NCBI RefSeq assembly: GCF_964204645.1
Contig: NC_134032.1
Location: 15,302,275 to 15,366,274 of the forward strand
DNA length: 64,000 bases
From: Tubulanus polymorphus
Lineage: Eukaryota > Animalia > Nemertea
Reading direction: 5' to 3'
Within the stretch, counting starts at the first letter, position 1. Each line of letters starts with the position of its first letter. Below the pieces are notes generated by a model. The model saw only the letters and a list, made by a program, of their open reading frames with translations. It was not told the DNA's origin and ran no database searches. This document shows positions 29,333-32,400 of this stretch, in pieces. Made by a program: the position numbers and the translations under genes.

Positions 29333-29423
29333 GTGTTCAGCTGCCTTTTTATGTCTAGTTGTTAGTGTTTTTGTAACTATTCCCGCCCTCGCGGCAAGCG
29401 TCGCTTCCTGTATGTTCTCCATG
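29333..29423 (+). CDS. KCNQ1: KCNQ exon 2a (alternative S1 and S1-S2 linker): [30 protein letters not shown]
   Basis: TTGTAG|...ATG|GTGAGT. 91 nt, same phases as exon 2b, retains C-L-x-x-S-V-F-x-T. Confidence 0.72.
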
Positions 29424-32400
29424 GTGAGTGATACTTCATCAAACTAACCCTAGAAAATTCTATTCTTTTTATTAAGTTTTATAACTTTTTTATTTATTTA
29501 CGCTTTATTCGCTTGTTTTATACAAAGATGCATTGGTTTTATAAATACAACATGGTTCGGTAGAAGTGGGGTCGAACCTGAACATGTTTTAGGTTTCCTC
29601 GCGGTAGCTTCGTTGCGTCGAAGCTACCGCGATCGTATCTATCGAATCGACTAGTTGCTCGTTGATCGGTACGTAAGCGTCGGCAAACGTACCGATCCGC
29701 CGCGAGTTTCTTTTTTTCTTCATCGATGCAATCGCGTCGGCAATGATGACACGATAAACGCCATTGCCGACGCGATCGTACCGTCGTTCGCGGCGCGCGT
29801 ACTCGTTTGAAGTGGTTGTAAATATCTCTCTCCAAAATCAATCTTAAAAAGTAGACACCGCAATATGAACAACATCTACGCAGTATCTATAATTGAACAT
29901 TCGGATCCATATAATATTGGGAAAATGTTTAATTCTGAACCGTGCGCGCCGCGATGGTTTTGATGACTGCTGCTGCTGCTGCTGCTGGTGGTGCTATCAA
30001 TTTCCTTTCATCCTGTATAACATTACCGTCCATTATTGACACGGTTAATTGGCTTCTGCTTTACTCTCGCGCTTGTGACCTCAACGTGTTCAATTTATTG
30101 GGTCCGATAATAGATTACCCCCCGCTACCCCCACCCCCATCCCCATCCCCACCCCTCGCCCGTTCAATTATAGCTTACAACCGATTAAAAATTGTTTTAG
30201 GGCGGAACAAATGATGTTCAAAAATGTAAACTTTTCTTCATGAGAATGGATTCGTTTTCTTTTAATTAAGAATATCAGGACAGCCATTACTTGTCAACGG
30301 GAAGAAACTTCTTTGTAGTGTAATTTATTTCATAACGTTGTATTATCGTTGATATATTTCAGATTTCTTATGGTTTTCATGTGTTTGCTGTTCAGCGTTT
30401 TTTCAACTGTTAAACAATACACACTTGTTGCAAGTCAAATATTATTTTATTTGGTAAGAAAATCAGTGTTGTACCGTCGTTTCCCTGTAGAGGTCGCTCG
30501 TCCTCGCACGTGTGTTACGTCATAGTTTAAGTGTTGTACGACTCACTGAGTTGTGAGTCAACTCAAAGAGCTCGCGTTCTTGAGTCATATCTTAATATAG
30601 AAATCAAGAACTGGGTCTGGATAAAAATACAATCAATGACGTCACATGCAACGCCCTCTACAGTATATCCATGGTGTTGTTATCTCTATACGGAGTTTGT
30701 GTGTAAATCGGGGCTAGTTCCTAGCTTGCCATCTCTTTCATAGATGGCGCCAGTGTCAATTTACCTTCTCAGAACCACCACCATGTGGCGCTGCAGTTAG
30801 TGTTTCCTCTTAAAATCCTATCCCCACGTTGCTTGCGCGAGTCTCTGCGGAATGTTAATATCCTCGAATATTCCTAATGATGAAATACTTTCTAGGGTTA
30901 TTTTTTTCAATACCCTCATGCCCACTAGATGTCGTTAGTGTCTTCGCGATCTTCAAAATTGTTACATTTTTATTGTTATCAAACTATTTTCCAATTGCTT
31001 TGTTCTGCGTAATATTTTCATTTTCAATAATCGATTTTATATCCGTGTACAATTCTCGGAGTGAAATAGGATTTAATCTAATCTTATCTTACGAACCTGA
31101 TGGAGGTGAAACTGCCAGATGCCACTGGGTTCGAATCCCGACGAGACAGGACCGACGAGACAGGATCGTCATCGAGCCATCAGTTTAGAATTGTTATAAC
31201 ATTTCGACCCGTTTATGAAATAATATTGGGCTTTAAAAAACATAATGTTCCCGTAATGCTATCGTCACCTATCAATTAACAATAATAATCTCATCTGTGT
31301 ATATTATAATATAGAAGACTAATCGATAAATTAGAGGCCACAAAAGTGCACGCAACCACAGCGTACAACAATCACCGCAGTTACAGTCAGATTTATAATT
31401 ATCCACCGAGGAGTAATCACGTGGTCTCATTATCCACGACAACCACGGCACGCACTATTACAACAATATAGCACGTTGAAAAGGTAATACTAATCGTAGG
31501 GCGTCGGCCTCGGATTACCGTCGTTCATACTTAAACCTGTTTTCGACTGCAATCCTCTGAGATATGAGGCGTGCTCCTGGTTACGTATGTTAAACTATGG
31601 TTCGAAGTTTGAAACCAGCATTAAAAAAAAACCCACTTGAATGATCCCTATCACTATTCGTTCTAAGCAGGTATTTTGGCCAAAGGAGTTTGATTTATGG
31701 TTTCCTTCGAAATATTCTAGACCCGGTTCAAACAGTTGTGAGTCAGCTGAGTTAGTTGAACTCGGGACTATAGTTCTATTGTTTAGAGTGAAGTCTGAGT
31801 TAAAATTAGTTCATTTTCGATGTTATAACACATGAGTCAAACAGTGGAATTGGGTCATGGCTGATTGGATCTAGGGTATATGGAAGGCCGGGATCTTGTA
31901 AAAAAGAAAAGGCCACTGTGTCAGGCTTGGGTCTCTCCCTAGATATTAGATATTTTTGAAACATCAGAAAATATGCAATTTACGAAACGACGAGTTTCAA
32001 CGGTCTTTGTTTCGATGAAAAGGGCAGCCTCTCGGGAAAGGCAGGGGTCCGGACCCCGAGTCCAACCCCTAAATCCACACCTGCGGTGTCTTCTACGGTG
32101 TTTGCTGCATGTTGCATGTTATTTATAATATTCCTATAATAAACGTCGTTTCTAATTCGTGGATTTGACTGTGGAAACACAAAAACACTAAATCCCGTGT
32201 TTTCGGTAGTTTTCGGTAGTTTCACCGTCTACGGAATTTGTCTTACAGTCGTTTCGATGAGTAGCTCCTAAACAATTGCGCGATTCAAATTATAATTCGT
32301 ATTAGAAATCTTCTGTCTGTAACACATGTTCTCCGTAAGGCGTTTTGATCCGAAAGTTCGTCAATAATCAATTGTAAATGCAATCTAAAATCCATCCACA

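What the first reader, a model, noticed from the sequence alone, without database searches (positions are those of the whole stretch)
29333..30453. Tandem duplicated, apparently mutually exclusive S1-S2 voltage-sensor exons in a KCNQ1-like channel
Seen: two 91-nt exons (29333-29423 and 30363-30453) with canonical splice sites, identical phase and the shared C-L-x-x-S-V-F-x-T motif. Including both (182 nt) or neither shifts the frame. Exon 2b is KCNQ1-like. Exon 2a is divergent: small residues CSAA at the start of S1 and an uncharged [10 protein letters not shown] linker. Known: extracellular S1 of KCNQ1 (S140/V141/T144 region) tunes deactivation and contacts KCNE subunits. Inference: splicing swaps voltage-sensor modules to give two gating or pharmacology variants. 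I do not know of this arrangement in vertebrate KCNQ1.
Basis: partly seen in the sequence, partly recalled or inferred. Interest (0 to 1): 0.82.

Follow-up and report, generated by a model that had tools for sequence, protein, structure and literature searches.

The report
Duplicated voltage-sensor exon in KCNQ gene
A ribbon-worm KCNQ potassium-channel gene carries two intact, either/or copies of the 91-base exon that builds the first helix of its voltage sensor, which probably lets one gene make two channel versions, though no RNA data could be obtained to show that the divergent copy is used.

Summary
Two 91-nt AG/GT-bounded open exons lie 939 nt apart on the + strand of a KCNQ gene: 2a at 29333-29423 and 2b at 30363-30453. 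Both accept the phase-2 end of coding exon 1, which lies 47 kb upstream, and both give Val at the split codon. Using both puts a TAA in 2b; skipping both puts a TGA in exon 3.

- **Exon 2b** is the canonical KCNQ S1/S1-S2 exon. It matches KCNQ1 residues 130-158 in the PDB.
- **Exon 2a** is very divergent (8/30 aa, 36/91 nt), and HMMER does not recognise it.
- **Evidence that 2a is a real copy:**
  - It is the best ungapped match to 2b among 29,945 open windows.
  - It beats composition-preserving shuffles (p about 5e-6 to 2.5e-5).
  - It aligns in register with KCNQ homologues at the conserved S1 positions.
  - It is one of only three strong-donor candidates among 228. The other two are 2b and the paralogue's exon 2.
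- **Age:** neutral decay to this nucleotide divergence rarely keeps such a score (2.5e-4). I read 2a as an old duplicate kept by selection.

Use of 2a is unproven. The scan has noted about 70 similar exon pairs elsewhere in this genome.

Verdict: a probable mutually exclusive exon pair, new for KCNQ, of moderate interest.

The parts
29333..29423 (+). Exon 2a: divergent copy of the S1 / S1-S2 linker / start-of-S2 exon (91 nt, phase 2 to 0)
   Evidence: Open frame with a tag| acceptor and a |gtgagt donor. It is the best non-self match to 2b in the window and is unique in the genome.
30363..30453 (+). Exon 2b: canonical KCNQ S1-S2 exon (91 nt, same phase)
   Evidence: PDB phmmer hits KCNQ1 residues 130-158 at E 2.9e-4. 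tblastn with mollusc and mite KCNQ proteins hits it.
32734..32860 (+). Exon 3 (S2 to the S2-S3 linker), the common acceptor for 2a and 2b
   Evidence: 65% identity to Octopus KCNQ.
29224..29337 (+). 22-nt tandem repeat, about 5 copies. Each copy ends in TTTTGTAG|G, and the last copy supplies the acceptor of 2a
   Evidence: TRF: period 22, 5.2 copies, 95% matches; the repeat finder family D1. By eye the unit resembles the first ~45 nt of 2a with two internal deletions. Using AGs further upstream would add 22-nt steps; the in-frame +66 option meets a stop, because the open frame starts only at 29289.
29171..29223 (+). Older, degenerate partial copies of the 5' part of 2a
   Evidence: the repeat finder D9, sequence, local alignment score 26 against a shuffle mean of 18.5.
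29441..29456 (+). Arm 1 of an inverted pair, 18 nt past the 2a donor (lead only)
   Evidence: 15 of 16 bases complementary to 30889-30904. Reached by 3 of 100 Markov shuffles.
30889..30904 (+). Arm 2 of the inverted pair, 436 nt past the 2b donor. Pairing would loop out 2b (lead only)
33028..33203 (+). Exon 4 (S3-S4, with the [19 protein letters not shown] voltage sensor)
   Evidence: Ion_trans; KCNQ1/2 chains, E 1e-21.
33635..33763 (+). Exon 5 (S5 to the pore turret)
34019..34129 (+). Exon 6 (pore helix, TVGYGD filter, S6)
   Evidence: (89% identity to Octopus).
34367..34551 (+). Exon 7 (S6 gate GILGSG and helix A)
45290..45490 (+). Exon carrying the KCNQ C-terminal domain (ends approximate)
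   Evidence: Pfam KCNQ_channel, E 3e-27; tblastn.
46267..47013 (+). Last coding exon (tetramerisation helix and tail)

Best explanation
An old tandem duplication of the 91-nt exon that encodes S1, the S1-S2 linker and the first residues of S2 left this KCNQ gene with two alternative cassettes. Exon 1 can splice to either 2a or 2b, and each then splices to exon 3. Because 91 is not a multiple of 3, transcripts with both or neither carry an early stop and should be removed by nonsense-mediated decay, so only either/or products survive. 2b gives the canonical channel. 2a keeps the conserved S1 face (F-x-C-L-x-x-S-V-F-x-T-I). It replaces the inner half of S1 with small residues, the extracellular linker with an uncharged Pro/Ala/Ser stretch, and the first turn of S2. 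That would give a second voltage-sensor variant with the same pore, S4 and C-terminus. Shown here: the anatomy, the frame logic, the homology statistics and the signature of past selection. Inferred: actual use of 2a, its regulation, and any change in gating or partner binding.
For: Exact architecture and phase. Stops when both or neither exon is used. 2a is the best of 29,945 open windows against 2b. Shuffle p is 2.5e-5 against 2b and 5e-6 against the family. The best register of 2a on every full-length KCNQ homologue with an S1 that matches 2b well coincides with that of 2b, with scores 31-42. Only three of 228 length- and frame-compatible candidates have a strong donor. In the S1 half, nucleotide identity is highest at codon position 2 (11/16), against 8/16 and 7/16 at positions 1 and 3. 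By my own comparison of the two sequences, four of the eight shared residues use different codons. Simulated neutral decay to the observed 39-40% nucleotide identity keeps an open frame with score >=38 in only 2.5e-4 of runs. Together these indicate a long period of purifying selection on 2a, which is still fully intact. Several other old exon pairs in this genome were judged real by other follow-ups (these are leads, not evidence).
Against: No orthologue could be examined, so conservation of 2a is unknown. HMMER finds no PDB match for 2a at E<=10, and tblastn with KCNQ proteins does not pick it up. All the similarity is in 16 residues of a hydrophobic helix encoded by T/G-rich DNA, where chance windows reach similar 16-residue scores. 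The acceptor of 2a sits in a young 22-nt tandem array of look-alike acceptors that could divert splicing to out-of-frame sites. The C1 paralogue has no second copy.
Confidence: 0.62

Rival explanations
1. 2a is a true but retired duplicate: a pseudo-exon that once served as an alternative cassette and is now skipped, or included only at noise level.
For: There is no expression evidence. The linker/S2 half has lost all detectable similarity to 2b. A recent tandem expansion has remodelled the acceptor region. No database KCNQ examined has a 2a-like uncharged linker.
Against: The frame, the exact 91-nt length, the AG and a consensus gtgagt donor are all intact, although the copies are near saturation in nucleotide divergence. 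A dead exon stays intact only briefly compared with the age of this pair (and inference). The conserved S1 positions are the ones retained.
Confidence: 0.24
2. Chance: a T/G-rich repeat-derived stretch of intron happens to read as a hydrophobic helix with an S1-like motif between an AG and a GT.
For: The 5' half of 2a resembles the adjacent tandem repeat. 16-residue windows scoring 34-36 occur elsewhere by chance. HMMER sees nothing. The scan looked at a whole genome, so rare coincidences are expected somewhere.
Against: The joint probability is low. About 37 candidates of the right length and frame are expected in the flanking introns. Each has roughly a 1-3e-5 chance of this score. No random candidate among about 225 has a strong donor. 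That gives on the order of 1e-5. The copy also lies on the right strand, 0.9 kb from the real exon, and ends in the F-x-M that precedes the exon-3 Glu in other KCNQs.
Confidence: 0.05
3. 2a is used, but not as a simple mutually exclusive partner. It could be spliced from an unseen alternative first exon or promoter inside the 47-kb intron 1, or it could act together with 2b as a regulated frame-breaking (poison) exon that lowers channel output.
For: Intron 1 is 47 kb and was not searched for alternative 5' exons. Including both exons gives an early stop.
Against: A poison exon needs no conserved S1 coding pattern or exact length. 2a has the same phase as exon 1's donor, so no extra exon is required.
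Confidence: 0.07

Closest known systems
Vertebrate KCNQ1 exon 2 (91 bp, residues about 130-159: S1, S1-S2 linker, start of S2)
   Same: Same exon length and the same segment: 2b aligns to KCNQ1 residues 130-158. From my own knowledge, the phase is also the same, and this part of S1 (S140, V141, T144, I145) tunes deactivation and lies next to KCNE1. 2a keeps the equivalents of C136, L137, S140, V141, T144 and I145.
   Different: As far as I know it is a single-copy constitutive exon in vertebrates (not tested here). Here it is doubled in tandem, and one copy has an uncharged linker.
Mutually exclusive exon pairs in voltage-gated channels: Nav DI S3-S4 exons 5N/5A (6/6A in SCN5A; PMC8939363, PMC4831019), Cav1.2 exons 8/8a, Drosophila cacophony IS4 exons (bioRxiv 10.1101/2024.06.14.598978)
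   Same: A tandem duplicated exon swaps one piece of a voltage sensor or pore while the rest of the channel is constant, and one copy is used per mRNA.
   Different: Those are in four-domain Na+/Ca2+ channels, concern S3-S4, S4 or S6, differ by few residues, and are proven by cDNA and electrophysiology. This one is in a Kv7 subunit, swaps S1/S1-S2, differs at 22 of 30 residues and is unproven.
Known KCNQ/Kv7 splice variation (C-terminal cassette exons of KCNQ2/4/5, N-terminally truncated KCNQ1 isoform 2)
   Same: One KCNQ gene gives several channel isoforms.
   Different: From my own knowledge these affect the cytoplasmic termini, not a transmembrane helix of the voltage sensor. Two full-text searches found no paper describing a KCNQ S1-S2 exon pair.
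Other old tandem exon pairs noted in this same genome (arrestin, PNPO, HSDL1, ephrin, unc-13, Rab11)
   Same: The same kind of architecture in the same animal. Several are reported as shared with annelids and molluscs.
   Different: Those are AI notes that I did not check. For KCNQ no second species could be examined.

Membership tests
KCNQ / Kv7 voltage-gated K+ channel (the host gene) | KCNQ-specific C-terminal domain (Pfam PF03520) | tested here: met
   E 3.2e-27 on window:45251-45499.
KCNQ / Kv7 voltage-gated K+ channel (the host gene) | Six-TM Ion_trans core with an arginine-rich S4 and a GYG selectivity filter | tested here: met
   Ion_trans hits on exons 3 and 4. S4 and TVGYGD are seen in translation. 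The best PDB matches are KCNQ1 and KCNQ2 chains at E 1e-21. Identity to mollusc and arthropod KCNQ proteins is 62-69% across 10-11 exons.
KCNQ1 subfamily specifically | Orthology to KCNQ1 rather than to KCNQ2-5 | tested here: inconclusive
   KCNQ1 chains score only marginally above KCNQ2. The nearest database proteins are named both 'member 1' and 'member 5-like'. A second gene on C1 has an exon 2 that looks to me more KCNQ1-like (compared with my recollection of human KCNQ1). No tree was built.
Mutually exclusive exon pair | Adjacent exons of equal length and phase with canonical splice sites | tested here: met
Mutually exclusive exon pair | The two exons are homologous (arose by duplication) | tested here: met
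   The support is statistical, not by a standard search tool. See; HMMER and tblastn do not detect 2a.
Mutually exclusive exon pair | A mechanism that forbids both or neither | tested here: met
   A frame shift with an early stop arises in both cases. Removal by NMD is inferred.
Mutually exclusive exon pair | Transcripts contain one or the other, and both kinds exist | not testable with these tools
No transcript-derived protein of this species was found.
Mutually exclusive exon pair | Both copies conserved in related species | not testable with these tools
   No near relative is in the protein libraries (best tail identity 43%).

The most novel reading that the evidence does not exclude
The pair is a working, regulated switch of the S1/S1-S2 module of a Kv7 voltage sensor. 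It would be the first mutually exclusive transmembrane exon pair described in the KCNQ family. The 2a form would be a channel with an uncharged outer S1-S2 loop and a slimmer inner S1, and so with different gating or accessory-subunit or toxin sensitivity. Exon choice may be guided by the GU-rich acceptor array and by a long-range intronic stem (29441-29456 with 30889-30904) that loops out 2b.
Probability: 0.5. Interest if true: 0.6.

Novelty: new variant of a known kind. Interest (0 to 1): 0.42.

Why it matters
Alternative, mutually exclusive exons are a main way in which animals diversify Na+ and Ca2+ channel voltage sensors. To my knowledge, and in the two literature searches made here, nothing comparable is described for Kv7/KCNQ channels, whose S1 outer end is a known control point for deactivation and for KCNE partner contact. 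If 2a is used, nature has provided a ready-made S1/S1-S2 swap on an otherwise identical channel. That would be a clean tool for asking what this module contributes to Kv7 gating. It would also be one more example of the many old exon pairs in this small nemertean genome. If 2a is not used, it is simply a well-preserved relic.

Tried and rejected
**RNA evidence**
- I did not trim, retry or route around it, so read laying was never used.
- Later searches were made by reference only, as the message said to go on with other tools.

**Close relatives through proteins**
- The last exon was searched against 1.84 billion representatives. The best hit was only 43% identical, so neither this species nor a near relative is in the collection.
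- Three word-index searches with the 2a ORF, the 2b ORF and exon 1 gave nothing for 2a or 2b. Exon 1 gave four exon-1-only fragments.

**Orthologous loci** (all 12 look-ups used)
- The Octopus and Argopecten genes are too long to fetch.
- Five products were not on record.
- Three ENA/Logan contigs hold only the last three exons.
- Two had no DNA available.
- One was a spliced transcript.

**Other checks**
- Isoforms of mollusc and mite KCNQ genes in hand all share one exon-2 sequence.
- The paralogue on C1 has a single exon 2 within +/-20 kb.
- I tested whether the GC-rich 3' half of 2a came from the GC-rich hairpin element downstream. The alignment score was below the shuffle mean, so this was rejected.
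- The G-rich/C-rich inverted pair 28804-28821 / 30138-30155, which would loop out 2a, is matched or exceeded in about a quarter of shuffles, so it was rejected.

- The joined (spliced) protein was never sent to any search or folding tool. Exons were joined only inside a local script to read the frames.
- For that reason no structure prediction of the two isoforms was made.

Full report
**Where and what**

The window is G000:C8:15302275-15366274 of a 268-Mb, 77-contig assembly. Earlier notes of this scan call the animal the ribbon worm Tubulanus polymorphus. I could not verify that. The closest database proteins are lophotrochozoan, and the small genome agrees with published flow-cytometry values of 313-358 Mb (PMC8468679).

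The + strand carries a KCNQ/Kv7 channel gene:
- Pfam finds Ion_trans on exons 3 and 4, and KCNQ_channel (E 3e-27) on a C-terminal exon.
- Translation shows the S4 arginine ladder and a TVGYGD filter.
- Exon 4 matches solved KCNQ1 and KCNQ2 chains at E 1e-21.
- tblastn with Octopus and Tetranychus KCNQ proteins maps eleven coding exons.
- Identity to KCNQ proteins of molluscs and arthropods is 62-69%.

Coding exon 1 is not in the window. It lies 47.2 kb upstream of 2a (L005:1905-2131), starts with an ATG just after an acceptor, and ends ...CTT GT|gtaagt.

**The observation**

- Exon 2a is 29333-29423 and exon 2b is 30363-30453. Each is 91 nt, one base plus 30 codons, bounded by AG and GT.
- The first base of either exon completes the same Val codon (GTG or GTA) with exon 1.
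- Either exon joined to exon 3 (32734-32860) reads through.
- Both together give a TAA sixteen codons into 2b. Neither gives V-K-S-stop (the exons were joined only in a local script to read frames).

**Exon 2b is the ordinary exon**

2b aligns over its full length to KCNQ1 residues 130-158 in the PDB (E 2.9e-4). It also aligns to the S1-S2 segment of every full-length homologue that has an S1. The exon length, and from my own knowledge the phase, equal those of human KCNQ1 exon 2.

**Is 2a a real copy or a coincidence?**

This needed care for four reasons:
- 2a shares only 8 of 30 residues and 36 of 91 bases with 2b.
- Neither tblastn nor phmmer against the PDB finds it.
- Its 5' half is T/G-rich and resembles the tandem repeat just upstream.
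- The similarity lies entirely in the first 16 residues, the S1 helix. That half scores 36 of the total 38, by my own sum over the 2a and 2b translations. On 16 residues alone, unrelated open windows in 288 kb reach 34-36.

Against coincidence:
- Over the full 30 codons, 2a is the best non-self match to 2b among 29,945 open windows of the window. It scores 38 against a null of -27 +/- 14, and the next best is 26.
- Shuffling the residues of 2a reaches its score 5 times in 200,000 against 2b, and once in 200,000 against seven KCNQ homologues summed.
- On every full-length homologue with an S1 that matches 2b well, the best register of 2a is exactly that of 2b. Its scores (31-42) are as high against insect and mite channels as against its own neighbour.
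- Among all 228 open AG-91-GT candidates on both strands of 144 kb, only three have a GTRAG[T/A] donor. By sequence these are 2a, 2b and exon 2 of the paralogue on C1.

About 37 candidates of the right length and frame are expected in the flanking introns. Each has a chance of 1-3e-5 of reaching the score and of about one in a hundred or less of a strong donor. The expected number of such coincidences here is therefore about 1e-5. Even allowing that the scan looked at a whole genome, I take 2a to be a true duplicate (about 95%).

**Alive or dead?**

- *Age.* Nucleotide identity (39-40%) is close to the 26% expected from intron composition.
- *Codon positions in the S1 half.* Identity is highest at codon position 2 (11/16), against 8/16 at position 1 and 7/16 at position 3. 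By my own comparison of the sequences, four of the eight shared residues are written with different codons. This is the pattern of long purifying selection on a hydrophobic helix, not of neutral drift.
- *Second half.* The linker and start of S2 are at random level in sequence. They still keep exactly 14 codons and end in F-x-M before the exon-3 Glu, as other KCNQs do.
- *Simulation.* Neutral decay from a 2b-like start to the observed identity leaves an open frame with score >=38 in 2.5e-4 of runs.
- *Inference.* A copy that had stopped being used would keep frame, length, AG and a consensus donor for only a small fraction of the time these copies have been apart. This is my inference, not a measurement.

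I therefore favour a still-functional alternative exon, at a confidence of 0.62.

**Points that weaken this**

- There is no RNA evidence.
- There is no comparative evidence. The nearest sequence to the gene's last exon in 1.84 billion representatives is 43% identical. Exon-level searches found nothing useful.
- All twelve contig look-ups failed to deliver the 5' part of an orthologous gene.
- None of the mollusc, mite or insect isoforms in hand has a 2a-like segment.
- 2a is unique in the genome, and the only other KCNQ gene, on C1, has a single exon 2.
- The acceptor of 2a is the last of about five 95%-identical 22-nt units, each ending TTTTGTAG|G. Older degenerate copies of the exon's 5' part lie further upstream. 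This array is young. Its upstream AGs would give out-of-frame or stop-containing extensions. It may weaken 2a, or, being GU-rich, it may be a regulatory platform. I cannot tell which.

**How it would work**

Exclusivity needs no special device, because the 91-nt length makes double inclusion and double skipping unproductive. Removal by NMD is inferred. I looked for intronic pairings of the docking/selector type.
- A 15-of-16 complementary pair places one arm 18 nt after the 2a donor and the other 436 nt after the 2b donor. Pairing would loop out 2b. It is matched by 3 of 100 shuffles and is only a lead.
- A G-rich/C-rich pair that would loop out 2a is not above chance.

At the protein level both forms share S2-S6, the pore and the whole C-terminus.
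- 2a keeps the S1 positions that are constant across KCNQs: Cys, Leu, Ser, Val, Thr and Ile of the outer S1. From my own knowledge these are the equivalents of KCNQ1 C136, L137, S140, V141, T144 and I145.
- 2a changes the inner S1 to Cys-Ser-Ala-Ala and the loop to an uncharged Pro/Ala/Ser run.
- It also changes the first turn of S2.
- An effect on gating or on partners that bind the outer S1 is plausible but wholly untested.

**Comparison and novelty**

Mutually exclusive exons in voltage sensors are well known in Nav and Cav channels (for example PMC8939363, PMC4831019, bioRxiv 10.1101/2024.06.14.598978). Known KCNQ splicing concerns the cytoplasmic ends (my own knowledge). Two full-text searches found no report of a KCNQ S1-S2 exon pair. 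If real, this is a new variant of a known kind. The scan has already noted about 70 duplicated-exon candidates in this genome, so it also belongs to a general feature of this animal.

**Rules and omissions**

The species name rests on an earlier AI note.

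Noticed in passing
window 34334-34366: A 33-nt tandem duplication of the acceptor plus the first 17 nt of exon 7. An upstream ccag| would add an in-frame, stop-free 11 residues ([11 protein letters not shown]) right after the S6 'PA' hinge. It resembles the repeated-acceptor array before exon 2a, so this may be a local habit of duplicating 3' splice sites. Probably not used, since it would disrupt the gate.
   Followed up: partly
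window 27909-27979 (+): A full-length tRNA gene (Rfam RF00005, 64.5 bits) inside the 47-kb first intron of the KCNQ gene.
   Followed up: no
window 29590-29800: A GC-rich block between 2a and 2b with several near-perfect hairpins (for example 29599-29612 with 29619-29632 at 14/14, and 29724-29745 with 29762-29783). It is unique in the genome and has no Rfam match. Function unknown.
   Followed up: partly
G000:C1:16458457-16458546 (L002, L007): A second KCNQ gene, whose single exon 2 looks to me closer to human KCNQ1 than 2b is. Its S3-S4 exon appears split and lies 36-38 kb downstream of exon 2.
   Followed up: partly
window 26850-27100: A long imperfect trinucleotide (CTG/CAG-type) repeat block in intron 1. 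It reads as poly-Leu, poly-Ala or poly-Gln depending on frame and strand.
   Followed up: no
window 23080-23500 and 48900-49000: Repeated segments whose translation (…GIEPGPPAWQARILPLNHRC…) looks like tRNA-derived SINE copies. Several further dispersed repeats occur at 24.2-24.9 kb and 48.0-48.3 kb.
   Followed up: no
window 59772-60812 (+): A 347-residue open frame that looks like a seven-transmembrane receptor, downstream of the KCNQ gene. It is also the subject of another first-stage note.
   Followed up: no
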